From IMG/VR virus record IMGVR_UViG_3300023174_000046, positions 1 through 64,000 of that record: 64,000 nucleotides of DNA; one strand, written 5' to 3'. Shown piece by piece: positions 13,771 through 42,903 of this stretch. A model generated the notes under the pieces. It ran no database searches, had not been told where the DNA came from, and saw only the letters and a list, made by a program, of their open reading frames with translations. The position numbers and the translations under genes were made by a program. Each line of letters starts with the position of its first letter. Within the stretch, counting starts at the first letter, position 1.

Positions 13771-15648
13771 ATGGCATGGATTAATTTTACCGATTTTACA
13801 GGCAATTCTGCCACATTTCCAGGTGATTATCTCGTTGGCTATATTGGCGTTCAAGAGCAAAAATACCCTGTTGTTGCATTAAAAAATGGGTTAAGCGCCG
13901 GTTTATTTACTGCGCAAAACCTCCTTGTTACTGAAAACACCACAATTCGTGGCAACCTATCCGTCTTAGGCTCACAGAGTGTTTTTGAAACCATTGTTTC
14001 AGTTACATCAGCATTGAGTGTTGTTAACACTGGTACAGGACCTGCATTAACAGTTAAACAAACAGGTACTGAACCTATTGCACTTTTCTTAGATGACAAC
14101 AACAACACATTTCGCATAGATGATAATTTCAAAGTTAGTTTTTTTAACAGTCAAGCTACTGGCACATATTCCGTTGCCGAAGGTAACAACACAGTAGCTA
14201 TAGGTACTGCCAGCCATGCAGAAGGCGTCATCACCACAGCTTCAGGCAACTACAGCCATGCAGAAGGCAATAGTACCGCCACTGGCCGTCGCAATAACTA
14301 TATCGCGTACTCTTCAGGAAGCAAAACATTCACTTTTGCTCCTACCATATCAGCTAATTTTGCATATGTTGTACCTGGTACCACATTGCGTGGGTTTGAC
14401 AATGGAGGTGAAGGGTTTGATGCAAAGTATTTTACTATCACGGTGGCCAGCAGAAGTACCATCACAGGGGCCATTGTGGCCACTGCAGATGCTATTGGTT
14501 GGGATTCAAACAATAACGGATTTTTGATTGACAATTCAGGTACATACGGTCATGCTGAAGGCAGCAACAATGTTGCATCTGGTATGGGCAGTCATGTAGA
14601 AAATGGTGGTAATGTAGCTTCAGGTGAGTGGAGCCATGCAGAAGGCGTTGGCACCATAGCTTCAGGCAATACATCACATGCAGAAGGCGCTGGAACAATA
14701 GCTCGTGGTGCATATTCACATGCTGCAGGTGGTAGTGCAGAAGCAGCACACGACAGAACTTGGATATGGAAAGGATCAACAAATGCCAGTTACCTATCCA
14801 CTACCAGAACTGATCAGTTTGTAGTGAGCGCAGCAGGTGGTCTTTTCTTGAACAATGCAGTAGGCATAAACACTGACAGCATTGACAATGCTTTGACAGT
14901 TGTAGGTAACATTTCTGGTAACAGTGGCTTGTCAGTCAATACACTTACAGGTAGAAACATTTCGCTCGTTCATAACCCTGCTAATGATGGTGTGAATTCA
15001 TACATACAGCTAGGTGAATTTACAACTGGTAGTACCACTGCATCTGCATTTTCAGGATTTAGATTTGAATATAATGAGGCTACCAATTTTTTAACTCTAA
15101 GCAGCATAATTGGCAATACAATTACAAATGTGTTGAATGTGGAACCAAATAGAAGTGTTACACCTTACACTGCTACCTTTACACCCTTCACCTCTGGCGG
15201 CGTTGGCATAGGTCCAGGTGGCACAATATTCTTTCCCCCTGCACTGTCTGGTACCATACCCAGCAGTGAATTGTCATCCAGGTTGCTAAACAACCGAGGA
15301 ACAATTGAAGGTGTGTTGTTTTTTGCCAATGATGGTGCATTTAATCTAAAGCAATACACACTGGAATTTGCAAAAGATGCAGCATTCACTGTGCAAAAAA
15401 CACCCATATATCTTAAAACTTCTGGTGAAACAGGCTCTTCAATCGTGAGACCAGTGAATGGTGCTTTTGTCAATGACCGCATTGTAATGCCTGCTGCAAA
15501 TGCTACTCAACCATGGGGTGCCAGCGGCACATTGATTCAATACCCATATGTGGCTGGTGATTCCATATACTACAGAATTGGCTTTGTGTATCCAACTGCA
15601 TTTGAATGCATGGGATTGTCTGCAGGGTACATCAGAATTATACCTTAA
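13771..15648 (+). CDS. tail fibre with YadA-head-like SHAEG repeats
   Basis: multiple (A/S)SGxxSHAEG repeats; TAAATA-N6-ATG. Confidence 0.75.
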   Translation: MAWINFTDFTGNSATFPGDYLVGYIGVQEQKYPVVALKNGLSAGLFTAQNLLVTENTTIRGNLSVLGSQSVFETIVSVTSALSVVNTGTGPALTVKQTGTEPIALFLDDNNNTFRIDDNFKVSFFNSQATGTYSVAEGNNTVAIGTASHAEGVITTASGNYSHAEGNSTATGRRNNYIAYSSGSKTFTFAPTISANFAYVVPGTTLRGFDNGGEGFDAKYFTITVASRSTITGAIVATADAIGWDSNNNGFLIDNSGTYGHAEGSNNVASGMGSHVENGGNVASGEWSHAEGVGTIASGNTSHAEGAGTIARGAYSHAAGGSAEAAHDRTWIWKGSTNASYLSTTRTDQFVVSAAGGLFLNNAVGINTDSIDNALTVVGNISGNSGLSVNTLTGRNISLVHNPANDGVNSYIQLGEFTTGSTTASAFSGFRFEYNEATNFLTLSSIIGNTITNVLNVEPNRSVTPYTATFTPFTSGGVGIGPGGTIFFPPALSGTIPSSELSSRLLNNRGTIEGVLFFANDGAFNLKQYTLEFAKDAAFTVQKTPIYLKTSGETGSSIVRPVNGAFVNDRIVMPAANATQPWGASGTLIQYPYVAGDSIYYRIGFVYPTAFECMGLSAGYIRIIP

Positions 15649-15685
15649 CTCTTGAACTTTACATCTCTTGGTTTATCATAAAATG

Positions 15686-16126
15686 GTGAAACATTTTATA
15701 ACTTGGGATATATTTGATGGCTATATTGATCAACTCTCGCAAAAAATAAAAGAAAATATAGACACCGCAGATTACGATATTGTTGGTATCTCACGAGGTG
15801 GTTTGATTCTTGCTGCAGCACTTGGCTATGCATTAAAAATAAAAAATGTTTATAGTGTTGGTGTAAGAAGCTATTCAAATAATGACGTTCAAGATGAAAT
15901 AGAGGTGTATCAGCATCTGAATCTTGGAAATTTAAAGCGTAATTTATTAGTAGTTGACGATGTATCGGATACAGGCAATACATTTTTATATCTACAGAAA
16001 CTGTTGTCAGATAAAGAATTTATAACTGTAAGTCTTGCTGTGAAGGATAAAACAAAGTGTGTTTCCGATTACAGTGCATTGCGACTAAATTCTGATATTT
16101 GGATAGTATTTCCGTGGGATAAGTAG
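15686..16126 (+). CDS. type I purine phosphoribosyltransferase (Gpt/Hpt-like)
   Basis: GISRGG, LVVDDVSDTGNT PRPP loop, WIVFPW; start ATG 15683 or GTG 15686 after TTGAAC-N16-TATCAT. Confidence 0.85.
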   Translation: MKHFITWDIFDGYIDQLSQKIKENIDTADYDIVGISRGGLILAAALGYALKIKNVYSVGVRSYSNNDVQDEIEVYQHLNLGNLKRNLLVVDDVSDTGNTFLYLQKLLSDKEFITVSLAVKDKTKCVSDYSALRLNSDIWIVFPWDK

Positions 16127-26976: not shown

Positions 26977-27429
26977 TTAACTGGTTATATAGGGTTTGTT
27001 TTTAAGATCTAAAACATAATCACTACAAATACCTAGACAATCTGAAATAACGTGAGGGTACTTTTCAGGCAACACATCAATGCTTTGTTTAATTTTATCT
27101 TCGCTTGGAAAAGCCCATATATAGTTTTTACTTGTTAGTGTTAACTTGTCTTGTTCATGCCAGAAATAGTGTATATCTTTATTCTGTAACTCAACCACAG
27201 CTTGAGTGTTTTTGCAGTGAACCCAAAGCCGTCCTCTTCTCTCATATAACCAATTGTAGTTTATTATGTATTGAGGGTAATCGTGTCCTAGGAACCATTG
27301 TGCCTCTTTAAACCATAAATCTATTTCAGCATCAAAACCTAAACTTAGTGCACTATCAATATAGTTGGGAGAATTTTCCTGAGCAACATTTACCCCGTTA
27401 ATATTGCCTCTATGTGATATTACTATCAT
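26977..27429 (-). CDS. GDPD/PLC-like phosphodiesterase domain protein
   Basis: ISHRGN...ENSP.YI..AL..GFDAEIDLW...LGHD...WVHCKN. Confidence 0.75.
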   Translation of the reverse strand: MIVISHRGNINGVNVAQENSPNYIDSALSLGFDAEIDLWFKEAQWFLGHDYPQYIINYNWLYERRGRLWVHCKNTQAVVELQNKDIHYFWHEQDKLTLTSKNYIWAFPSEDKIKQSIDVLPEKYPHVISDCLGICSDYVLDLKNKPYITS

Positions 27430-28118
27430 TTTTTATAAAAATCAGCTTCTGATATATATGAACCATAATATTTATCCCAAAGATATTTGTGGTAATTTTC
27501 ATTAAGATTGCTTGTGCTTATCTCTTGTAAATTAGATGGAGTTACAAACATCCACTTTAAACTATCATTTGATCGATATGAAAAGAAATCTTGCACCGTA
27601 CTGTTATATTTTTTATCAAAAATATTTTTTAGATTTATCATTCCATCATAATTATATACCCAGTCTTTACTTTCCCATATAGAAATTAAAAAATCAACAT
27701 CACCATACATAAACAGATCACCAATTAAATGGTTTAAATTTGTTTGAGCTGTAATTAGACATTTCTTATTTTCTTTATTAATTATATTTTCACAATATTC
27801 AAATATATTATCATGTGACGAGAATGAGTCTAAGCGCATTTTTAGAATATTTTTTGCACCTAATTCTTTTGCGAGAATTAAACTATTTCTTACACATACA
27901 GGGTGACCAAAACCTATTTCAGAGGGCATAAACGGATACCACAGTATCCTATCAGCTTTTATAGAATCTTTAATACTATCAATACCGTGTCCAGCAACGA
28001 TAACTGTTAAATCACTATATTTTTGTTTAAAGTAGTCTACAACAAAATTAAAGATATTAACTTTGTCTTTCTCAGATTCATCTCTAACAAAACAATGACT
28101 TAATATCAGGTATTTCAT
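27426..28118 (-). CDS. putative glycosyltransferase-like protein
   Basis: operon context; KMRLD and IGDLFMYG motifs. Confidence 0.45.
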   Translation of the reverse strand: MKYLILSHCFVRDESEKDKVNIFNFVVDYFKQKYSDLTVIVAGHGIDSIKDSIKADRILWYPFMPSEIGFGHPVCVRNSLILAKELGAKNILKMRLDSFSSHDNIFEYCENIINKENKKCLITAQTNLNHLIGDLFMYGDVDFLISIWESKDWVYNYDGMINLKNIFDKKYNSTVQDFFSYRSNDSLKWMFVTPSNLQEISTSNLNENYHKYLWDKYYGSYISEADFYKK

Positions 28119-28689
28119 AGTTAAATAATTCAAAATCTTTTTTATAAAAATCTATAATAATTTCTAACGACAACGGTGTAAACCATTTTTTTAAATTCTT
28201 ATCTGTATTAGTTTGCCTCATGCGCATAGTATAGTCCAATTTCAAATCCAATTTTTCATTTATTTTTTGACAAGATTCGTTAAAGTTTTCATATCTATAT
28301 ATACAGTCAGCGATGCATGCATCATTTTCATAAAAAAAGCTATATTGGGGTACAAAATGAATTTCTGCGCATAAAGAAGTTTTATTGAAATTTAAACAAA
28401 ATAATTCAATATCTGAAAACTGCAAAGCTTCTTTTGACCATGTTATAATATGCCCGGGATCTGTTATAGCATCAACATATGTAGAAATAAATCTATCTAA
28501 TGGATTTCTTGTAAAGCCAAATTTAAAATAATCTTTATGTGTTTTTGTCTCAGGAATTTTCGAAAGTGGTGCGTGGTAAATATTTGGTAACTGCCCTAGT
28601 GTGGAATGATCTAGCTGCGTCATTATTGTAGTTGAACCAGTTTTTGGAACAGAAGTGAATATAAATTTTTTGTCGTGATTAACAATCAT
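28084..28689 (-). CDS. sulfotransferase family 2 protein
   Basis: PKTGSTT 5'-PSB loop, RNPLDRFIS 3'-PB motif, HFVPQ, YKKDFELFNY. Confidence 0.85.
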   Translation of the reverse strand: MIVNHDKKFIFTSVPKTGSTTIMTQLDHSTLGQLPNIYHAPLSKIPETKTHKDYFKFGFTRNPLDRFISTYVDAITDPGHIITWSKEALQFSDIELFCLNFNKTSLCAEIHFVPQYSFFYENDACIADCIYRYENFNESCQKINEKLDLKLDYTMRMRQTNTDKNLKKWFTPLSLEIIIDFYKKDFELFNYEIPDIKSLFC

Positions 28690-29834
28690 ATATCAGAGAT
28701 ACGTGTATAATGTCTACCACCATCAAACTTATTGTTAGTAATTATCTCTATATATTTCTTAAATTGTTCTTTGCTTAAGTTCTTAGAAGGGAAAGAAAAG
28801 AAATTGCAGCAATTGTGCTTGATTGCATACTCACAAGAATAGTCATCGTACACAAGGCATGATCTTATGCCTTCTACTTTATTGGCACAAATATTAACTC
28901 CTTGCCCGGTTCTACAAAACGCAAGAACTAGATCAACATTTTTTTTAAGCAGTTGCTTGGCTGATTCTTTGACGTATATATTGTAATCACAATCTTTGCC
29001 TGAGAATGTTCCGTAATCAATATAATCAATCTTATATTCATTCAACAACTCTATTGCGAGTTCCTTAGCCTCATAACCAGAATGATCAGAGCATAAACCT
29101 ATACGCAATGTATCATACAATACATTTTTTTCATAGAATTCTAATTCTAACGGTGTTCCTAATACATAGAATTTATCTGTTAAGATTGCATTAACCTTTA
29201 AATTATTTTTTATGTAGTGATTATAAATAGGACATATATAATATTCATTTTTTACTGTTTCTTTATTTTCAATCATTATTGATGCATACTTAAAAAACAA
29301 TTCTGGTTTTTTAAAGAAATATAAACCTGCTGCAGCGTTATCGCTTATAACTTCTTTTTCTTTTGTTTCAACAACAAATCCATCTTCACCCAACCTTGCA
29401 TAGCTATGATCGGGGCTATTCGCTTTAAAGGTAAGCAGTGATGCATCGTATTTAATAAACAAGTCTAGATCAAAATTTGGCGCAAAAGTAACATCCGGAG
29501 TATAGACAACAAGCGGCAGGGCGTTGTCAATATATTCACGAGAATACAAACAAGTACATAATGCACCGCCTGTTAATTCATTTAATTCTATAATCGTTAT
29601 ATTATTGCCAAATTTTTTCTTTAAAAAACTATCGATTGAAAAATTTAAAACGTGTTGCTTCTGAACAATAAAAATTATATTTGCGTCACTCAAGTTAAAG
29701 GGTGTCAATGCATGCTCTAATATTGTCTTCTTATTACAAGGTATCATTGGCTTGGGCATCAAATAACCTGCTTCTTTAAAGCGGTTTGCAGAGCCAGCTA
29801 TAGGTAATACTAAGTTATATTTTTTTGAGCTCAT
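28686..29834 (-). CDS. sugar-phosphate nucleotidyltransferase fused to RpiB/LacAB isomerase
   Basis: N: PIAGSANRF..GY..PKP, EKEVISD.A.AGLY; C: SDHSGY, CRTGQG.NI.ANKV.GIR, HN.CN, FDGGRH..RI. Confidence 0.85.
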   Translation of the reverse strand: MSSKKYNLVLPIAGSANRFKEAGYLMPKPMIPCNKKTILEHALTPFNLSDANIIFIVQKQHVLNFSIDSFLKKKFGNNITIIELNELTGGALCTCLYSREYIDNALPLVVYTPDVTFAPNFDLDLFIKYDASLLTFKANSPDHSYARLGEDGFVVETKEKEVISDNAAAGLYFFKKPELFFKYASIMIENKETVKNEYYICPIYNHYIKNNLKVNAILTDKFYVLGTPLELEFYEKNVLYDTLRIGLCSDHSGYEAKELAIELLNEYKIDYIDYGTFSGKDCDYNIYVKESAKQLLKKNVDLVLAFCRTGQGVNICANKVEGIRSCLVYDDYSCEYAIKHNCCNFFSFPSKNLSKEQFKKYIEIITNNKFDGGRHYTRISDI

Positions 29835-30483
29835 ATGTTATTAAATCGTGTGACGGCTTTATTGATTTATGCACATTTAGTTTATTTTCAATTAAATTAC
29901 ATAAAACGTATGCTGCAAATTTATCACCCAACCCTAATACATTCACATTATCAACAATCTCAGCATTAAAATCGGTAGAACCATCTCTTGTGTAAAGAGT
30001 GCTGCCCGTCTTCTTATGCAGAATTATGTTTGGGATTTTTCTTGATAATTCCTCCATACTAATAAAACAATCTTCATCAGAAATAAACAACAAATCTATC
30101 TTGTTTAAGAATTCAGAAGTTCCATCTAGATGTCTACCATTACAAACATCTGCGGTAACGAAACCGTTTAAATTTTCAATAAACGAGATATCTTCTAATT
30201 CATTAATATACATTATATGATGTATTGAAGAAGACTGCACTATAGCGGGTGAGCTATAGAGATTGAGACATGATTTGCTAGTTCTCTTTGATTCCTTTTG
30301 ATTTATCATTACAAGGGATTCACCTATTGCAGTAGGTTGTAAAGAAATTTTGAGGTGAGGTTTATATTCTTTTATGCTCTTCCACACATTACCCATGCAA
30401 CCGACCGAAGTCGTATTTTCAAAACCGTTAAATATGTTATCGAAGCTCAGATGGCCGTAGAGAGAGATATCAAAACTTTTCAT
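29815..30483 (-). CDS. PfkB-family carbohydrate kinase
   Basis: GCMGNV and C-terminal NVLGLGDKFAA anion-hole motif. Confidence 0.75.
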   Translation of the reverse strand: MKSFDISLYGHLSFDNIFNGFENTTSVGCMGNVWKSIKEYKPHLKISLQPTAIGESLVMINQKESKRTSKSCLNLYSSPAIVQSSSIHHIMYINELEDISFIENLNGFVTADVCNGRHLDGTSEFLNKIDLLFISDEDCFISMEELSRKIPNIILHKKTGSTLYTRDGSTDFNAEIVDNVNVLGLGDKFAAYVLCNLIENKLNVHKSIKPSHDLITYELKKI

Positions 30484-31000
30484 GTTGATCTATTGCGTAT
30501 ATGTTTTCTATGCTGTAGTTAGAAATAAGATCTCTCTCTAATAACCATTCGTACAGTTCTAATACACAATTGTCACCTCCTTTATTCTTTAAAACGTGGG
30601 AAATTTTTTTAATTTCTTTTGGAGCATCGCTCGGGCAAAAAGCATATTTTACTTTTTTCATAATTTCTAAATCAAACGTATCATCTCCCATAAACACTGC
30701 TTCATCTGATAAGCAATTATATTTTTCTAATAATGTATGCAAAAACTCACTCTTGCACATACCCCGGGTATAATAAAAAGGTATATTTCTATTTTTAGCT
30801 ATAGCCTCATTTATCTTGTTATCTCCTGATAAAAAAACAACTTCAATATTTACAGATTTAAATTTTTTAATAGCAGTAAAGTCTTTATCGCAGAATGTTT
30901 TGTACGCTGCAGTGCCGCTGCTGTCGTAGTATTTTTTACCATCTGTTAAAATACCATCTACATCTAATATTATTAATTTTATCAAAATATTATTCTCCAA
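30470..31000 (-). CDS. KdsC-like HAD phosphatase
   Basis: LDVDGILTDG, FMGDDTFD, PSDA, GG..CVLE. Confidence 0.85.
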   Translation of the reverse strand: MENNILIKLIILDVDGILTDGKKYYDSSGTAAYKTFCDKDFTAIKKFKSVNIEVVFLSGDNKINEAIAKNRNIPFYYTRGMCKSEFLHTLLEKYNCLSDEAVFMGDDTFDLEIMKKVKYAFCPSDAPKEIKKISHVLKNKGGDNCVLELYEWLLERDLISNYSIENIYAIDQHEKF

Positions 31001-31609
31001 TTATCTTATCAAATTAACATCTACATCTACACGTTCTTCACTTATACTGTTTGTTGTGCAATGATGTTTTAATAAAGTCTCGGGATGAAAAATTATATTA
31101 TTATCGATATAATCATTTATTCTTAGGTATATCTCTGATATTTTATCCATGGTTTTTGAGTCAGAAAACCAGAATTGGTCACAATACCCGCCAAGATAAT
31201 CTTTTTCTCTGTTGCCAATCAATACAATAGCATTATTCGTTGTTCTCAATTTGACCTTATTTGTAAATGTACAATCTGGTCTCAATCTCACTACTACATC
31301 AAAATCTTCACCAGTTTCAACTTCATAATCGCGTTTCAATTGAACACATTTGTAAACTTTATACATCCACTTTAAAATATTTGTTATGTTAGGGTTAGTT
31401 CCGCTCGATTTTGCTGTAAATTTTGCAAGTTTATTTTTGTAAAGATCAAGCTCTGGTACATACAAGGATCTCTCTGCAATAAGCCCTGGTAAAGGAACAT
31501 CTGTTACAGTAAATATCTTATGATCGCAGTCAAATAAATTTGAAATTATGTTATCTTTGTTCTGTTCCCAGGTTCTTGTTTGGCCTGAAATACATATAGC
31601 AACTTTCAT
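31001..31609 (-). CDS. putative glycosyltransferase (MKxAxCxSGQxR family)
   Basis: VAICISGQTR, FDVVVRLRPD, CDQFW, HPETLL. Confidence 0.6.
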   Translation of the reverse strand: MKVAICISGQTRTWEQNKDNIISNLFDCDHKIFTVTDVPLPGLIAERSLYVPELDLYKNKLAKFTAKSSGTNPNITNILKWMYKVYKCVQLKRDYEVETGEDFDVVVRLRPDCTFTNKVKLRTTNNAIVLIGNREKDYLGGYCDQFWFSDSKTMDKISEIYLRINDYIDNNIIFHPETLLKHHCTTNSISEERVDVDVNLIR

Positions 31610-31629
31610 ACAACATTATATTACAGGAG

Positions 31630-31673
31630 TTGATTAGTTTTTCAACCATAATATAATATGTAGTTCTTTTACA
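31630..31673 (+). promoter_or_regulatory. tRNA operon promoter plus boxA-like element
   Basis: TTGATT-N16-TATAAT; AGTTCTTTTACA at 31662-31673. Confidence 0.65.
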
Positions 31674-31680
31674 TTTTATT

Positions 31681-31754
31681 CGGGCATTAGCACAGCCTGG
31701 TAGTGCACTTGCTTTGGGAGCAAGATGTCGCAGGTTCAAATCCTGCATGCCCGA
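31681..31754 (+). tRNA. tRNA-Pro(TGG)
   Basis: cttgc-TT TGG GA-gcaag. Confidence 0.93.
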
Positions 31755-31761
31755 AGTTTTT

Positions 31762-31839
31762 TGTTGGGTGGACGTTTTAGCGTTTTCCCTGTCCTTTAAA
31801 ACAACTGAAGAGAGAAACGCGACAAGTTGTTTACCAGCA
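31762..31839 (+). ncRNA. unannotated structured RNA (three-way junction with kissing loops)
   Basis: P1 tgttgg/ccagca, P2 ggac/gtcc, P3 aaacaact/agttgttt, loop-loop gcgtttt/gaaacgc. Confidence 0.5.
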
Positions 31840-31841
31840 TT

Positions 31842-31924
31842 GGGTAGATACCGAAGTGGCCAAACGGGGGAGACTGTAAATCTCTTGGCTTACGCCTTCA
31901 GTGGTTCGAATCCACTTCTGCCCA
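31842..31924 (+). tRNA. tRNA-Tyr(GTA)
   Basis: ggaga-CT GTA AA-tctct; long variable arm. Confidence 0.93.
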
Positions 31925-31930
31925 AATTTC

Positions 31931-32014
31931 CGTCGCATGGCGAAATGGCAGACGCGCTAGCCTTAGGAGCTAGTACCGCAAGGTGTGTAGGTTCAAGTCC
32001 TACTGTGACGACCA
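31931..32014 (+). tRNA. tRNA-Leu(TAG)
   Basis: ctagc-CT TAG GA-gctag; variable arm; encoded CCA. Confidence 0.92.
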
Positions 32015-32021
32015 TTATAAT

Positions 32022-32094
32022 GGGGGTGTAGCTCATCTGGTAGAGCGGGACCTTTGCAAGGTCTAGGTAGCGGGTTCGAGTCCTGTCACCTCCA
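32022..32094 (+). tRNA. tRNA-Ala(TGC)
   Basis: GGGGGTG/CACCTCC with G3-U70; TT TGC AA loop. Confidence 0.93.
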
Positions 32095-32130
32095 TGTTAT
32101 TAAAGTAAGATCCAAGGACTAAGTAATTAT

Positions 32131-32403
32131 ATGCCTAGTCTACGCAACTGTGTTACTATAAAAGCTATACTGTATATTGGAATTGCTTCACTCACAACAT
32201 TGATGTCGGATTTAGGCGACTTCAAGTCTTTTGAAGAAATTAACCCGGTTAAAGCTACCTTGTTTGGTATTAATTTCATTCTGCAAGGTTTAATTGCCTG
32301 GAGAGCATTCTTGGATCAATCTGTGGGCCGTGCTCGTATTGATGCAGCCATGAAGAAGAAAGAGGAAAAACAGTTGGAACTAATAGTTGAAGGTCCTAAA
32401 TAA
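32131..32403 (+). CDS. putative holin
   Basis: two TM segments, charged C-terminus, heads the lysis cluster. Confidence 0.55.
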   Translation: MPSLRNCVTIKAILYIGIASLTTLMSDLGDFKSFEEINPVKATLFGINFILQGLIAWRAFLDQSVGRARIDAAMKKKEEKQLELIVEGPK

Positions 32404-32407
32404 TTGC

Positions 32408-32857
32408 ATGAAAACTATTCTTCCTTTTATTCTTATTCCTTTGCTTGTTGCAGGCTGTGCAACAACTGGTACCGATGGTAAAATTGATCCAGCACAAACA
32501 GTGGAAAATGCTCTGCCCTACATTGCACCAGCAGTTACTTTAACTTGCACTGTTGTTCTGGATCAAGCATTGAGTGAAAGTGATCGCATTGAAAAAGCAA
32601 AAATGATTAACAACGTTGCAACAATTGTGGAGAGTTTGACACGTGGTGCAACACCCACACCTGATCAACTGCAAAAAGCACTCACTGATTATCTTCCTGT
32701 GGAAAAGACACATTGGTCAAAATACGTTGTAGCCATCAAAGATTTGTATGCTACACAGTTTAATAAAGTTGGTGGTAACGGCAAGCTCGCAGTGGATGTT
32801 CTCAATGCAATCGCCAAAGGTTGCAAAGATGCAACTGAAAGCTACGTTAATAACTAA
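32408..32857 (+). CDS. lipoprotein
   Basis: MKTILPFILIPLLVAG-C lipobox; TAAATA-N5-ATG. Confidence 0.7.
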   Translation: MKTILPFILIPLLVAGCATTGTDGKIDPAQTVENALPYIAPAVTLTCTVVLDQALSESDRIEKAKMINNVATIVESLTRGATPTPDQLQKALTDYLPVEKTHWSKYVVAIKDLYATQFNKVGGNGKLAVDVLNAIAKGCKDATESYVNN

Positions 32858-33057
32858 TGCCTGCAGGAATCTTACAAGCACTATTAAGCGCCATTTCTGG
32901 GATCTTTGGAGCTATCAATAATGTGTTTGGAGCAAAGAACACCCCTGAAATGAAAAAAGCTCAAGAACAACAAAAAGAAGTTGACTTTAACAATGAAGTA
33001 GAAAAAGCAATAAAAGGTAAAGATGTTAAAAAAATTCGCGATATTCTCTCTGAGTAG
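32857..33057 (+). CDS. putative i-spanin-like membrane protein
   Basis: N-terminal hydrophobic helix then charged helix; overlaps the next lipoprotein gene. Confidence 0.5.
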   Translation: MPAGILQALLSAISGIFGAINNVFGAKNTPEMKKAQEQQKEVDFNNEVEKAIKGKDVKKIRDILSE

Positions 33058-33442
33058 TTTTTTATTATGCTCGTGTACCACAGTTACACCCAACAAAGTG
33101 ACAGATGAAATAGCTTCTTATGATGCCACAACACCCAATGGATATGATATACAAAACTCTGGCTTTATTGGCTTTACTGATGATGGGCGGGGTCTTATTA
33201 CTCAGTTTGGTCTTCTCCGGTACAACACCCTCATCAAAGCGTATAAGATAAGATTCAAGTCATTCAAAGGTGTAGAACTAAACGAAAACGATGGCATAAC
33301 AGAGTACACTGATAAACGCAACAACAAGCTTTATATCATGGATCAACAGCACTTGGTGTATTACGCCATTCTGAACAGCTGGCGCAAAGATGGCAAAGAA
33401 CCAGATTCCATCTGGGACAAGGCCAAAGACCTGGTCAAATAA
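33023..33442 (+). CDS. lipoprotein, putative o-spanin-like
   Basis: MLKKFAIFSLSSFLLCS-C lipobox. Confidence 0.6.
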   Translation: MLKKFAIFSLSSFLLCSCTTVTPNKVTDEIASYDATTPNGYDIQNSGFIGFTDDGRGLITQFGLLRYNTLIKAYKIRFKSFKGVELNENDGITEYTDKRNNKLYIMDQQHLVYYAILNSWRKDGKEPDSIWDKAKDLVK

Positions 33443-33443
33443 C

Positions 33444-33608
33444 ATGATGAGAACTGTTGCAGTTGTATTTGCAAGCGTCATGTTAACCAGTTGCTCTCCT
33501 GTGCAACAACCTGCACCATACCAAACCAAGTACCCAGATGCACCCACCATGCAGAGTGCTGCAGATGCCAATACCAAGACATTCAACGAACATTCATTTG
33601 ATAGATAA
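33444..33608 (+). CDS. small Pro-rich lipoprotein
   Basis: MMRTVAVVFASVMLTS-CSPVQQPAPY. Confidence 0.55.
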   Translation: MMRTVAVVFASVMLTSCSPVQQPAPYQTKYPDAPTMQSAADANTKTFNEHSFDR

Positions 33609-33613
33609 TTATT

Positions 33614-34105
33614 ATGAATCAAAACGATTTTCAAAAATCTATGAAGTTTGTATTGGATGCAGAAGGTGGTTACACCAACGACCCAGCTGATCCAGGTGGT
33701 GAGACCAATTATGGCATTGACAAGAGAAGTCATGCAGATGTGGATATCAAAGCATTAACTGTGGAACAAGCCACAGACATATATTTCACTGAGTATTGGG
33801 TTCGGTTCAATTGTGAACAATTTGCATGGCCCCTTAATTGTGTTTATTTTGACAGCTGTGTGAACACTGGCAACAAACAAAGCAACAAATTCTTGCAACG
33901 AGCAGTGGGCACTGAGGCTGATGGTGTGTTGGGACCCAAAACATTGGGTGCCATTAACAGCAAGCGCGCAGACACAGTTGCCAATGCTACCATTGATCAA
34001 CGCCAACGATTTTATGAAACATTGGCACAGAACAAGCCTGCGCTCAAAAAGTTTCTCAAGGGCTGGACCAACAGAAACAACAATCTTAGAAAATTTATTG
34101 CTTAG
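33614..34105 (+). CDS. GH108 endolysin with C-terminal peptidoglycan-binding domain
   Basis: EGGY.NDP.DPGGETNYGI; DGVLGPKT; KFLKGW.NR. Confidence 0.9.
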   Translation: MNQNDFQKSMKFVLDAEGGYTNDPADPGGETNYGIDKRSHADVDIKALTVEQATDIYFTEYWVRFNCEQFAWPLNCVYFDSCVNTGNKQSNKFLQRAVGTEADGVLGPKTLGAINSKRADTVANATIDQRQRFYETLAQNKPALKKFLKGWTNRNNNLRKFIA

Positions 34106-35035: not shown

Positions 35036-35439
35036 GGGGGTGAATGGAATCGATTGAATGGTAGATTTCATGAGTGCAAGTACCGGGGCATGCCGGTTAC
35101 CAATAGCAATCATATTAAATGCCGAAGATAACTTCGACATGGCTATGAGTCTTGAAGAGGCTGACGCAATTCTTGCAACAGCAGGCTTCGTGGATTCAGA
35201 AGCTGAACTCGAACTAGTTTAGTTCGATCGTTCTACTGTAGAGTGAAGCTTGTAAAGTAGAGCGTGTTACTGGCTTTCGTATGGTCTGGGTTTTAACAAT
35301 TAATAGATCATACGTACAAAATTGTTATCAGTAAGGGCTTTTTGCTTAGTTTAATCCTTATGAAAATTCAACTAAAATAAACTTGTAGTGCTTATGAGAG
35401 AAGCTTTTCAAGACCTGGGTTCAAATCCCAGCACCTCCA
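35036..35439 (+). ncRNA. ssrA: tmRNA
   Basis: 5' GGGGGTGAATGGAATCGA; 3' GACCTGGGTTCAAATCCCAGCACCTCCA; Ala-type G3-U acceptor; tag frame 35121-35222. Confidence 0.9.
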
Positions 35440-35468
35440 TTTTTTATAAAAAAAGATTAAATAATAAT

Positions 35469-41030: not shown

Positions 41031-41614
41031 TCTTATCGTTTACTGGTCCACAAAGTTCAGGTAAGACTACTCTTCTAAAGAAGTGTAAAGAGTATTATGG
41101 TTCGAAGTTATGTTATATTGATGAAGTTACTAGACTAATTAAACGTTGGCATAATTGTGATATAAATGAAGAAGGTGCAAGTGATGTTACGCAGACATTA
41201 ATTCTAAATAAAGAATTTGAGAATTTGTTTTATAATTACAAAGGATTTGGATTTCAAGGCATATTGCATGATCGTTGCTTGATGGATGGCATGGTTTATA
41301 CAAGTTATTTTGCTGGTAGTAGACTAAATGATTTTCCTGTATCTAATAGCTTAGGTTTGTTATACTATACAAATTATATTAAAAAGTATGATCATATCTT
41401 TTATCCAAGTCCTCATGATGTTCCGCTGGTTGATGATGGTGAGAGAAGCATTAATAAAGAATTTAGGGATGCTATTATTGATAAGTATGAAAATTTTTGG
41501 CTAAAAGATGAGAGATTGAAAGATAAAGTTACTATTTTAAGAGGGACTGTTGACGAGCGAATGGAACAGATTAAGTCAAAGATATGTCAGTTGATGCCAA
41601 GCCTTTCTGTTTAG
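41027..41614 (+). CDS. P-loop nucleotide kinase-like (AAA_28/NadR-type) protein
   Basis: GPQSSGKTT, E..R, DRC..D..VY, DDGER. Confidence 0.8.
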   Translation: MILSFTGPQSSGKTTLLKKCKEYYGSKLCYIDEVTRLIKRWHNCDINEEGASDVTQTLILNKEFENLFYNYKGFGFQGILHDRCLMDGMVYTSYFAGSRLNDFPVSNSLGLLYYTNYIKKYDHIFYPSPHDVPLVDDGERSINKEFRDAIIDKYENFWLKDERLKDKVTILRGTVDERMEQIKSKICQLMPSLSV

Positions 41615-42903
41615 CTCCTTGGGCAGGCATTCACGCACTACCAGATGGGTTGGTGTACCCATGTTGCATGTCTACATTCGATCCCGAAAATTCGTTCGGT
41701 GATCTCAATAAAAATACAATTGAAGATATTTTAAATTCAGAAAAAGCAAAGCAATTTAGATGCAAGATGATGGCAAATAAGCCGGATGAGAGAGCTTGTA
41801 GTCATTGCATAAGTGAAGAAAAAACAGGAACAAAAAGTTTCCGTAATCACTGGAATACTAAGTATGAACATACTCTTCCTTTTGTTAAAGAAACAGATAA
41901 AGATGGTTATTATCGATTTAAAAATTTTCCATATATTGATATAAGACTATCAAGCTTGTGTAATTTTAAATGTAGAATGTGTCATAGTGGCTTGAGCTCT
42001 GCTTGGTTATTAGAAGACATAAAGTATGAATCAAATTATCAAAATTCTTTTAATCTTAAAACCGGTGTTATTGAGATACCACAAAAAGAAAAACTTATTA
42101 AATTTATTATTGATAGGATTGAGCATGTGGAGGAGATTGAGTTTGCAGGTGGTGAACCTTTTCTAATAGCAGATTATTTTACTCTAATTAAAGAATTTAA
42201 AAGAGCAAAAAATTTTAACGTTAGGATAAGATTTCATACAAATGCATCTTCTTTGTATTGTAAGGGTGAATATATACCAAACTTGCTCAAGGAGTTTAAA
42301 AATGTTTTTATAATGTTGAGTATTGACGGTTACAGTGAAGTTAATGACTACATGAGAAAAGGTAGTGTATATAATAAAATTGTTACAAATATAACTTTAC
42401 TTAAACAAATAGTACCACAAGCATTCTTGAGATTGGTACCGACAATTAGCATACCAACTGTATATAGTGTGCCTTTCTTGTATGTAGATTTCTTACGCAA
42501 AGGTTTAATTCGGCATGAGGATATTGCATGCAGACCTCTTTACGGGCCTGAATATCTTAACATACAGACACTACCATTAGAAGATAAATTAAAAATTTTA
42601 AAGTTCTATAATTACTTTATTGATAACATAACAGCTAAACTTCTACAACACTTTCCAGATGAAAGCGTCACATATGTTAAGCAAGAATTTTCATCAATTA
42701 TGAATTTCATGTTGCTTAAAAATCAAATTGTGCAATTTAATAGCAATAGGTTTAAGGAGAGTATTAAGCGGCTTGATATTCGACGAGACGAAAGTTACGA
42801 AGATATTTCACCAGAAACTGCTCATCTTTTATCAGGCAGTGTTTCAATATACAATCTAGATAACAAATATAATGAGTTGAAGACTTTCATAGATAGCATA
42901 TAA
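41584..42903 (+). CDS. radical SAM protein with N-terminal SPASM/twitch domain
   Basis: FCLAPW...PCC...CSHC; CNFKCRMC; GGEPF; SIDG. Confidence 0.88.
   Translation: MSVDAKPFCLAPWAGIHALPDGLVYPCCMSTFDPENSFGDLNKNTIEDILNSEKAKQFRCKMMANKPDERACSHCISEEKTGTKSFRNHWNTKYEHTLPFVKETDKDGYYRFKNFPYIDIRLSSLCNFKCRMCHSGLSSAWLLEDIKYESNYQNSFNLKTGVIEIPQKEKLIKFIIDRIEHVEEIEFAGGEPFLIADYFTLIKEFKRAKNFNVRIRFHTNASSLYCKGEYIPNLLKEFKNVFIMLSIDGYSEVNDYMRKGSVYNKIVTNITLLKQIVPQAFLRLVPTISIPTVYSVPFLYVDFLRKGLIRHEDIACRPLYGPEYLNIQTLPLEDKLKILKFYNYFIDNITAKLLQHFPDESVTYVKQEFSSIMNFMLLKNQIVQFNSNRFKESIKRLDIRRDESYEDISPETAHLLSGSVSIYNLDNKYNELKTFIDSI

What the first reader, a model, noticed from the sequence alone, without database searches (positions are those of the whole stretch)
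31762..31839. Unannotated tRNA-sized kissing-loop RNA inside the tRNA array
Seen: the other spacers in this operon are 6-7 nt, but the Pro-Tyr spacer is 87 nt and can fold almost completely. It has a closing stem tgttgg(31762-67)/ccagca(31834-39), hairpin ggac(31770-73)/gtcc(31791-94) and hairpin aaacaact(31799-806)/agttgttt(31825-32), and the two loops are complementary (gcgtttt 31780-86 / gaaacgc 31814-20). It has no anticodon arm or TTC T-loop. Inference: a stable ncRNA released by tRNA processing, such as a tRNA mimic, a decoy for anticodon nucleases, or a ribozyme/aptamer. T4 also carries non-tRNA stable RNAs in its tRNA cluster.
Basis: partly seen in the sequence, partly recalled or inferred. 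Interest (0 to 1): 0.7.

Follow-up and report, generated by a model that had tools for sequence, protein, structure and literature searches.

The report
Phage copy of CyVA-1 RNA
The long spacer between two tRNA genes of this freshwater T4-like phage holds a real structured small RNA, but it is a divergent copy of a described orphan RNA of cyanobacteria (the CyVA-1 motif, function unknown), here occupying a tRNA slot.

Summary
The element is not new. A low-threshold Rfam scan matches 31761-31840 (+) end to end to CyVA-1 RNA (RF02965): 37.4 bits, E about 1e-7, 4 bits under the gathering score.

The element fills one tRNA slot: 6 nt after tRNA-Pro and 1-2 nt before tRNA-Tyr. It lies behind one promoter-like site, with no terminator-like site in the scanned 31400-32500. 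It recurs in several independent lake metagenome assemblies. One strain carries five changes, all in the spacer, and none breaks a pair.

It is not a degenerate tRNA and does not resemble T4 rnaC or rnaD. I found no copy in related phages, three cyanophage genomes or IMG/VR. There is no RNA evidence for it.

Most likely it is co-transcribed with the tRNAs and cut out by tRNA-processing enzymes as a stable, trans-acting RNA of about 80 nt. That is inferred. Its function is unknown, as for the whole family.

The parts
31630..31657 (+). Promoter-like site TTGATT-16-TATAAT, about 22 nt upstream of tRNA-Pro
   Evidence: 10 of 12 consensus matches. The same upstream block precedes tRNA-Ala in the relatives with 87% hub identity (80% column identity). 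This is a consensus match only; function is not shown.
31680..31755 (+). tRNA-Pro (UGG), first gene of the operon
   Evidence: ARAGORN; Rfam tRNA 69 bits.
31756..31761 (+). 6-nt leader (GUUUUU) between tRNA-Pro and P1
   Evidence: Its length is like the other inter-tRNA spacers (5 and 6 nt).
31761..31840 (+). CyVA-1-like RNA element, whole match
   Evidence: Rfam RF02965: 37.4 bits against a gathering score of 41.4, E 1.5e-7 and 7e-8, model positions 1-77 of 77. The next best hit in the 217-kb genome is 14 bits.
31762..31767 (+). P1, 5' strand (pairs with 31834-31839)
   Evidence: The family P1 is 94.9% paired, and all 6 pairs change on both sides. The strain variant 31764 U>C turns a U.G pair into C-G.
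31770..31773 (+). P2, 5' strand (pairs with 31791-31794)
   Evidence: The family P2 is 96% paired, and all 4 pairs change on both sides.
31774..31790 (+). Loop L2 carrying the conserved motif GUUUUAGCGUU (family consensus GUUUUaCCGUU)
   Evidence: cmscan alignment; alignments A1 and A3.
31780..31786 (+). Loop-loop (kissing) helix, L2 strand GCGUUUU, pairs with 31814-31820 GAAACGC
   Evidence: In the family the core CGUU/ARCG is paired in 27-30 of 30 sequences; pair 26-69 is UG 15, CG 8, UA 7 and never unpaired. The helix reaches 7-8 bp in one cyanobacterial subgroup.
31799..31806 (+). P3, 5' strand (pairs with 31825-31832)
   Evidence: The family P3 is 92.6% paired, and all 8 pairs change on both sides.
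31807..31824 (+). Loop L3, GAAGAGAGAAACGCGACA (family consensus GAAGGAGAaCGACGUCA)
   Evidence: One extra A interrupts the family's AAGGAG. The natural variant 31822 A>U gives ...GUCA as in the consensus.
31842..31925 (+). tRNA-Tyr (GUA); its 5' end lies 1-2 nt after P1
31931..32014 (+). tRNA-Leu (UAG)
32021..32095 (+). tRNA-Ala (UGC), the only tRNA of this operon present in the closest relatives

Best explanation
The Pro-Tyr spacer encodes a divergent, phage-borne homologue of the CyVA-1 RNA motif. This is a three-way junction of about 79 nt. A 6-bp closing stem P1 carries two hairpins, P2 and P3, and their large conserved loops pair with each other.

The element sits in a tRNA slot of a four-tRNA operon behind one promoter-like site. 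No promoter-like or terminator-like site lies inside the spacer. It is therefore most likely transcribed with the tRNAs. RNase P cleavage at the 5' end of tRNA-Tyr would define its 3' end. 3' maturation of tRNA-Pro, with trimming back to P1, would define its 5' end. The compact pseudoknotted fold would protect what remains, a stable RNA of about 80 nt.

It then presumably acts in trans through its invariant loop nucleotides, on whatever partner the cyanobacterial CyVA-1 RNAs bind.

Shown here: the fold, the homology, the slot-like placement, and recurrence in natural populations. Inferred: co-transcription, excision, stability and trans action. Unknown: the partner and the biological role.
For: Homology. 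RF02965 matches 31761-31840 over the full model at 37.4 bits, E 1.5e-7 and 7e-8 in the 217-kb genome, where the next hit is 14 bits. Fourteen control genomes give nothing at E<=0.001. Of the eight cyanobacterial matches between 29 and 42 bits, four lie next to a stronger copy and the rest are full-length matches to the model.

Fold. All 18 stem pairs of the family change on both sides and are 93-96% paired. The covariation score is 0.644 against 0.249 in shuffles and at most 0.13 when partners are slid. The window keeps all three helices with different letters. The loop-loop core is kept across the family.

Placement. The element lies 6 nt after tRNA-Pro and 1-2 nt before tRNA-Tyr. The other spacers are 5 and 6 nt. 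There is a promoter-like site at 31630-57 and no terminator-like site in the scanned 31400-32500, which includes the spacer.

Reality in nature. The element is identical or nearly so in ENA, JGI and Logan assemblies of several lake samples. The X7 strain has 5 changes in 31758-31822 and none in tRNA-Pro or the covered start of tRNA-Tyr. None breaks a pair, one turns U.G into C-G, and one moves L3 towards the family consensus. The chance of 5 out of 5 pair-keeping substitutions is about 0.04.

Precedent. T4 places rnaD and rnaC in its tRNA cluster with 1-nt and 6-nt spacers.
Against: The score is 4 bits under Rfam's gathering score. A model built from one cyanobacterial subgroup alone gives the window only 14.5 bits, E 0.45, although it also gives bona fide members of another subgroup only 18-45 bits.

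Folding energy is not better than shuffles, z = -1.38. The loop complementarity is explained by composition.

No RNA contig covers the element in four lake metatranscriptomes, so neither expression nor ends are shown.

The closest phage relatives lack the element (87% hub identity), and a 47% relative has no match in its 22-kb locus. It is therefore dispensable for the lineage.

In 10 of the cyanobacterial copies, scanned over 8-kb loci, no tRNA is nearby, so tRNA-linked processing is not a general property of the family. The L3 motif AAGGAG of the family is interrupted here.
Confidence: 0.7

Rival explanations
1. Chance-folding filler. The 85 nt are a scar left by recombination between tRNA cassettes, and the resemblance to CyVA-1 is accidental.
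For: Energy z-score is only -1.38. Loop complementarity is compositional. The score is under the gathering threshold. The array is visibly modular: close relatives have only tRNA-Ala behind the same promoter, and other strains carry other cassettes. No RNA evidence exists.
Against: E is about 1e-7 over the full model, 23 bits above the next hit in the genome. The match fills the slot exactly. Both conserved loop motifs are present. The strain variants spare every pair.
Confidence: 0.1
2. A cis-acting part of the precursor. The fold only guides or times processing of the flanking tRNAs, for example as an entry site or roadblock for RNases, and has no life of its own.
For: It is embedded in the operon with tRNA-like spacing. 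The relatives manage without it.
Against: In cyanobacteria the same motif occurs with no tRNA within 8-kb loci and with conserved loop sequences. That argues for a function carried by the RNA itself. The other junctions of the operon need no such element.
Confidence: 0.12
3. A decayed tRNA gene, or an armless tRNA-like molecule.
For: It has tRNA size, sits in a tRNA slot and has a closing stem. Its layout recalls a tRNA without the anticodon arm: 2-nt J1/2, a 4-bp P2, a 4-nt J2/3, and loops that touch like D and T loops (inference).
Against: ARAGORN finds nothing down to a 30% threshold; only the permissive metazoan-mitochondrial mode calls anything. Rfam's tRNA, tmRNA, mascRNA and viral tRNA-like models do not match at E<=10. 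There is no T-loop or anticodon arm, and the positive match is to another family.
Confidence: 0.04
4. A homologue of the T4 stable RNAs rnaC or rnaD.
For: The phage is T4-like: its Gp23-type capsid protein matches PF07068 at 1e-92. T4 has stable RNAs in the same kind of position.
Against: T4 rnaC and rnaD are 139 and 119 nt long and give no RF02965 match at E<=10. The window element matches CyVA-1 instead.
Confidence: 0.03

Closest known systems
CyVA-1 RNA motif (Rfam RF02965; Weinberg et al. 2017, Nucleic Acids Res 45:10811, PMC5737381; the paper gives an average length of 78 nt)
   Same: Same length class. Same three helices in the same order, with the same junction lengths to within 1 nt. 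The L2 motif GUUUUA.CGUU and the L3 elements GAAG, GAGA and CG..CA are present. The same loop-loop contact is centred on CGUU/A(A/G)CG.
   Different: It scores 37.4 bits against a gathering score of 41.4. One extra A breaks the family's AAGGAG in L3. The kissing helix is 7 bp, against 4 bp in the commonest cyanobacterial type. It sits inside a phage tRNA operon, whereas 10 cyanobacterial copies scanned over 8-kb loci have no tRNA nearby. It is a single module, whereas 20 of 30 cyanobacterial copies are followed 15-20 nt later by a second, related module of about 95 nt. The phage shows no cyanophage marker genes.
Phage T4 stable RNAs rnaC (species 1) and rnaD (species 2)
   Same: They are non-tRNA RNAs placed in a tRNA gene cluster of a T4-type phage, separated from neighbours by 1-6 nt, and annotated as small stable RNAs. 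Their function is unknown (from my own knowledge).
   Different: They are 139 and 119 nt rather than 79 nt. They lie at the end of the cluster rather than between two tRNAs. No sequence or structure similarity is detectable with the CyVA-1 model.
tRNA-like processing modules such as mascRNA and bacterial YrlA (recalled from the literature, not tested beyond Rfam)
   Same: The idea is the same: a compact, non-decoding fold cut out by tRNA-processing enzymes. The layout recalls a tRNA without an anticodon arm (inference).
   Different: No match to any tRNA-like Rfam family at E<=10. There is 1 nt between P3 and P1 here and 2 nt in the family, where a tRNA stacks the T stem directly on the acceptor stem. 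Cleavage by RNase P is untested.

Membership tests
CyVA-1 RNA (RF02965) | Covariance-model score at or above Rfam's gathering score (41.4 bits) | tested here: not met
   37.4 bits; E 1.5e-7 and 7e-8; full model 1-77. Cyanobacterial matches go down to 40.3-41.5 bits.
CyVA-1 RNA (RF02965) | A 6-bp closing stem P1 enclosing hairpin P2 (4 bp, loop of about 16 nt) and hairpin P3 (8 bp, loop of about 17 nt) | tested here: met
   6, 4 and 8 standard pairs with loops of 17 and 18 nt. The helices covary in the family.
CyVA-1 RNA (RF02965) | Conserved L2 sequence GUUUUaCCGUU | tested here: met
   The window has GUUUUAGCGUU, one change (C to G) at a position that varies in the family.
CyVA-1 RNA (RF02965) | Conserved L3 sequence GAAGGAGAaCGACGUCA | tested here: inconclusive
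   The window has GAAGAGAGAAACGCGACA. GAAG, GAGA, CG and the final CA are present, but one inserted A breaks AAGGAG and the CG register is shifted. The natural 31822U variant restores GUCA.
CyVA-1 RNA (RF02965) | Pairing between L2 and L3. This was derived here; I could not check whether the published model annotates it. | tested here: met
   7 bp in the window. The family core is paired in 27-30 of 30 sequences, with C-G, U-G and U-A at one pair, and the helix is 7-8 bp in one subgroup.
CyVA-1 RNA (RF02965) | Occurrence in cyanobacteria or their viruses | not testable with these tools
   The host is unknown. The phage comes from freshwater lakes. Its capsid protein is closest to cyanomyoviruses, but at only 34% identity. 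No psbA, hli, talC or ferredoxin was found.
tRNA (RF00005) | Cloverleaf with anticodon arm and T-loop | tested here: not met
   ARAGORN finds none at thresholds down to 30%. There is no RF00005 match at E<=10 in 31745-31850.
T4 rnaC / rnaD stable RNAs | Placement in a phage tRNA cluster with tRNA-like spacers | tested here: met
   T4: tRNA-Arg, 1 nt, rnaD, 6 nt, rnaC. Window: Pro, 6 nt, element, 1-2 nt, Tyr.
T4 rnaC / rnaD stable RNAs | Sequence or structure similarity | tested here: not met
   No RF02965 match in T4 rnaC or rnaD at E<=10. Their sizes are 139 and 119 nt.

The most novel reading that the evidence does not exclude
CyVA-1 modules are substrates of the tRNA-processing machinery. 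On this reading, the closing stem, the two hairpins and the kissing loops imitate the acceptor stem, T arm and elbow of a tRNA that lacks its anticodon arm. A phage has captured one module into a tRNA operon to have it made and matured for free. It would then use the RNA during infection to engage or titrate the host partner of the cellular CyVA-1 RNA. This would give an orphan cyanobacterial RNA its first biochemical handle. It would also suggest that this unassigned freshwater T4-like phage infects a host that uses this RNA.
Probability: 0.15. Interest if true: 0.7.

Novelty: new variant of a known kind. Interest (0 to 1): 0.42.

Why it matters
CyVA-1 is one of many bioinformatically defined bacterial RNAs with no known function. 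A diverged copy that keeps the helices and loop motifs across a large evolutionary distance shows which features are under selection.

Its place in a phage tRNA slot suggests a concrete, testable maturation route through RNase P and the 3' tRNA processing enzymes. It also suggests a role that is useful to a virus.

For annotation, it shows that sub-threshold Rfam hits inside unusually long tRNA spacers deserve a look. The side observation that most cyanobacterial copies are the first half of a two-module RNA suggests the family model is incomplete.

Beyond that, the finding is a new instance and context of a known motif, not a new class.

Tried and rejected
**Pattern scans of IMG/VR**
- I scanned for the window's own loops, for canonical loops and for L3 alone. 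Every hit was a chance match on inspection.

**Search for relatives through neighbouring proteins**
- The upstream 202-aa protein found no relative in IMG/VR.
- The hub protein found relatives at 87%, 96% and 45-47% identity. None of those I could search has the element. The 96% contig is too short to reach the array.
- Records sharing the tRNA-Pro 3' half have no CyVA-1.

**Cultured phages**
- Three cyanophage genomes (S-IOM18, S-TIM5, S-RIM8) have no RF02965 match.
- BLAST of two cyanobacterial CyVA-1 copies against 50,697 phage records gave only chance matches inside genes.

**Models**
- Model R1, built on the MAFFT alignment with an automatic structure, captured only P3 and was discarded.
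- Model R2, built from one subgroup, is too narrow: the window scores 14.5 bits.

**Readings rejected**
- Degenerate tRNA.
- Homology to T4 rnaC or rnaD.
- A promoter or terminator inside the spacer.
- Function on the minus strand: its fold has z = 0.07.
- Loop L3 as a Shine-Dalgarno mimic. The family's AAGGAG is broken in the phage copy, so this cannot be the shared function.
- A phage homologue of the cyanobacterial neighbour membrane protein: none found.

**Other spacers**
- The other long spacers of the window's first tRNA array hold a promoter-like stretch and a small ORF, with no further RNA family match.

Full report
**Setting**

The window is the first 64 kb of a 217,413-bp virus record that CheckV rates 100% complete. 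The record is JGI contig Ga0214921_10000052.

The phage is T4-like. Its Gp23-type major capsid protein matches PF07068 at 1e-92. It is distant from cultured phages: the best hits are cyanomyoviruses at only 34% amino-acid identity. It occurs in freshwater and lake metagenomes. GC content is 35.7%, and I found no psbA, hli, talC or ferredoxin. The host is unknown.

ARAGORN finds 12 tRNA genes in the window, in two arrays plus a lone tRNA-Thr. Rfam also finds a tmRNA.

**The observation**

The operon reads as follows:

| Feature | Coordinates |
|---|---|
| tRNA-Pro | 31680-31755 |
| spacer, 85 nt | 31756-31840 |
| tRNA-Tyr | 31841/2-31925 |
| spacer, 5 nt | 31926-31930 |
| tRNA-Leu | 31931-32014 |
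| spacer, 6 nt | 32015-32020 |
| tRNA-Ala | 32021-32095 |

The window sequence alone is not statistically remarkable.
- The MFE is -20.8 kcal/mol with z = -1.38.
- The MFE fold is an alternative long hairpin.
- The loop-loop duplex is no better than shuffled loops of the same composition, p = 0.43.
- The minus strand does not fold, z = 0.07.

**What it is**

The default Rfam scan at gathering thresholds reported only tRNAs and the tmRNA. A permissive scan of 31745-31850 gave one strong match: RF02965, CyVA-1 RNA. It covers 31761-31840 (+) and model positions 1-77 of 77, at 37.4 bits against a gathering score of 41.4, with E 1.5e-7.

In the whole 217-kb genome this is the only hit of note, with E 7e-8; the next reaches 14 bits. 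Fourteen control genomes gave nothing at E<=0.001.

The conserved loop letters line up:

| Loop | Family consensus | Window |
|---|---|---|
| L2 | GUUUUaCCGUU | GUUUUAGCGUU |
| L3 | GAAGGAGAaCGACGUCA | GAAGAGAGAAACGCGACA |

CyVA-1 was described by Weinberg et al. 2017 (PMC5737381). The paper gives an average length of 78 nt. One later paper calls it a regulatory sRNA detected in halite cyanobacteria. Its function is unknown. The supplement that describes the motif was not available to me.

**Testing the fold with real family members**

A pattern scan of one genome per species found 10 cyanobacterial loci that score 76-89 bits. A sample of 151 cyanobacterial genomes had the motif in 16.

I aligned 31 cyanobacterial copies and the window to a structure-based model and counted pairs.
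- P1 is 94.9% paired, P2 96% and P3 92.6%.
- Every one of the 18 stem pairs changes on both sides.
- The covariation score is 0.644, against 0.249 for shuffles and at most 0.13 for slid partners.

Four core pairs, (C/U)G(U/C)U with A(G/A)CG, are paired in 27-30 of 30 sequences. One of them shows U-G, C-G and U-A and is never unpaired. In one subgroup the helix is 7-8 bp long. At the flanking pair, that subgroup has C-G where the window has G-C.

The three helices and the loop-loop contact are therefore real features of a known RNA family, and the window copy has them all.

A model built from a single subgroup gives the window only 14.5 bits. It also gives true members of another subgroup only 18-45 bits. 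The window is therefore a distant member, not an outlier of a different kind.

**What it is not**

- It is not a tRNA or pseudo-tRNA. ARAGORN finds nothing down to a 30% threshold. No tRNA or tRNA-like family matches at E<=10.
- It is not related to T4 rnaC or rnaD. Those do lie in T4's tRNA cluster with 1-nt and 6-nt spacers, but they do not match CyVA-1.
- It contains no promoter-like or terminator-like site.

**Is it real in nature?**

The same array with the element occurs identically or nearly so in ENA, JGI and Logan assemblies from several lake samples.

Three haplotypes of the element exist:
1. The window type.
2. A type with 31822 A>U, which turns ...GACA into the family's ...GUCA. 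It was seen in ERZ28574659 (loci L118 and L125), in run X7 and in a contig fragment of run X4.
3. The X7 type, which carries five changes:
   - 31758 U>C, in the leader.
   - 31764 U>C, in P1, turning U.G into C-G.
   - 31787 C>A, in the variable part of L2.
   - 31798 A>G, in J2/3.
   - 31822 A>U, in L3.

In the X7 contig, tRNA-Pro and the start of tRNA-Tyr carry no change. None of the five changes breaks a pair. By enumeration, only 52% of single substitutions in the spacer would spare all pairs, so five out of five has a chance of about 0.04. This support is modest but goes in the right direction.

**Relatives and origin**

The closest phage relatives, with 87% identity in the 817-aa baseplate hub, have the homologous promoter block followed directly by tRNA-Ala. 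Pro, the element, Tyr and Leu therefore form a block of about 340 nt that is present here and absent there.

A relative at 47% identity has a different array that includes a tmRNA, an HNH-like ORF and a 150-nt Pro-Ala spacer. It has no CyVA-1 match.

Contigs from lake metatranscriptomes show still other arrangements. One reads Pro, 93 other letters, Leu, Ala with near-identical flanks. Another reads Tyr, 93 letters, Pro, 96 letters, Leu. One Logan contig diverges right after tRNA-Pro. The array is modular, and the element travels as one cassette among tRNA cassettes.

I found no other viral copy.
- Five pattern scans of IMG/VR gave only chance hits (checked).
- Three cyanophage genomes have no match.
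- BLAST against 50,697 phage records found nothing real.

**How it most likely works**

The element starts 6 nt after the 3' end of tRNA-Pro and ends 1-2 nt before the 5' end of tRNA-Tyr. That is the same spacing as between the tRNAs themselves. One promoter-like site lies about 22 nt upstream of tRNA-Pro, at 31630-31657, with 10 of 12 consensus matches. No terminator-like site lies in the scanned 31400-32500, which covers the whole operon.

The simplest reading is co-transcription and excision by the enzymes that mature the neighbours. RNase P at tRNA-Tyr would make the element's 3' end. The 3' processing of tRNA-Pro would free its 5' side. The closed, pseudoknotted fold would resist exonucleases. 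This is what established knowledge of T4 tRNA-cluster processing would predict, but it is inference here. No RNA contig covers the element in the four metatranscriptomes I could examine.

In 10 cyanobacterial copies, scanned over 8-kb loci, no tRNA is nearby. The loop sequences are almost invariant. This points to a function carried by the RNA itself, acting in trans through those loops, rather than a mere processing aid. The partner is unknown.

The family's L3 contains AAGGAG, which resembles a Shine-Dalgarno sequence. The phage copy interrupts it, so anti-SD binding cannot be the shared function.

**Comparison and novelty**

The element works like, and is most probably homologous to, CyVA-1. 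It fails Rfam's curated threshold by 4 bits and differs from cyanobacterial copies in three ways:
- It lies in a phage tRNA operon.
- It is a single module, whereas 20 of 30 cyanobacterial copies are followed 15-20 nt downstream by a second, related module of about 95 nt.
- Its L3 differs.

I therefore rate it a new variant of a known kind. Interest is moderate. It is a useful clue for an orphan RNA and an annotation gap, not a new class.

**Limits**

- There is no expression or end-mapping data.
- The host is unknown.
- I found no second phage lineage with the element, so covariation within phages could not be tested.
- The published description of the motif, including any pseudoknot annotation and the basis of "virus-associated", could not be read.

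Noticed in passing
window 35036-35442 (+): The phage carries a tmRNA gene (Rfam RF00023, 91 bits). ARAGORN misses it at default settings. At a relaxed threshold it predicts an unusually long, acidic 33-aa tag, AEDNFDMAMSLEEADAILATAGFVDSEAELELV, without the usual ...LAA end. Relatives L104 and L109 also carry tmRNAs. In L109 the tmRNA lies inside the tRNA array and has the tag AEYDYSFEDEEVAIAA.
   Followed up: partly
cyanobacterial loci L072-L101, 15-20 nt downstream of each CyVA-1 (e.g. L073:1595-1690): In 20 of 30 cyanobacterial loci the Rfam-defined CyVA-1 is followed by a second, related module of about 95 nt. Its L2 motif is AGUUUUUGUCGC and its L3 holds an extra hairpin. It scores only 29-31 bits. 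The family model may describe only the first half of a two-module RNA.
   Followed up: partly
e.g. L079:671-1372 (+), L075:699-1388, L090:706-1407: In 13 of 26 cyanobacterial loci a conserved multi-pass membrane protein of about 230 aa ends 95-300 nt upstream of CyVA-1 on the same strand. It has no Pfam or NCBIfam family and appears only in cyanobacteria in the ESM Atlas. Three other loci have a cation-efflux transporter in that place. There is no homologue in the phage.
   Followed up: partly
window 31618-32095; L002:14925-15145; Logan contigs of runs X15, X16 and X4: The tRNA operon is modular. Relatives with the same promoter have only tRNA-Ala. Other lake strains have Pro, 93 nt, Leu, Ala, or Tyr, 93 nt, Pro, 96 nt, Leu. 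One contig (L117) switches to a protein-coding gene right after tRNA-Pro. I could not read the 93-96-nt inserts.
   Followed up: partly
window 31870 and 31884 (tRNA-Tyr anticodon stem): One assembly (ERZ3460575, fetched as loci L116 and L126) flips the G-C pair 31870-31884 to C-G, a textbook compensatory change. Other strains show G>A together with C>T at the same pair.
   Followed up: yes
window 32131-34105 (+): Directly downstream of the tRNA operon lies a probable lysis cassette. It holds a 90-aa protein (probable membrane protein, judged by eye from the sequence), a lipoprotein-signal protein at 32387-32857, two small ORFs and a Glyco_hydro_108 + PG_binding_3 endolysin at about 33614-34105.
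   Followed up: no
window 27426-31609 (-): Upstream of the operon, on the other strand, lies a sugar-modification cluster. It holds a sulfotransferase, a nucleotidyltransferase-RpiB fusion, a HAD hydrolase and a protein with a weak DUF7796 match.
   Followed up: no
L109:15355-15504 and 15583-16110 (- strand): A distant relative has a 150-nt spacer between tRNA-Pro and tRNA-Ala with no Rfam match. It also has a cysteine- and histidine-rich ORF between tRNA-Gln and tRNA-Pro that is probably an HNH homing endonuclease, judged by eye.
   Followed up: no
window 41584-42903 (+): A radical SAM / SPASM-domain protein is encoded near the capsid gene.
   Followed up: no
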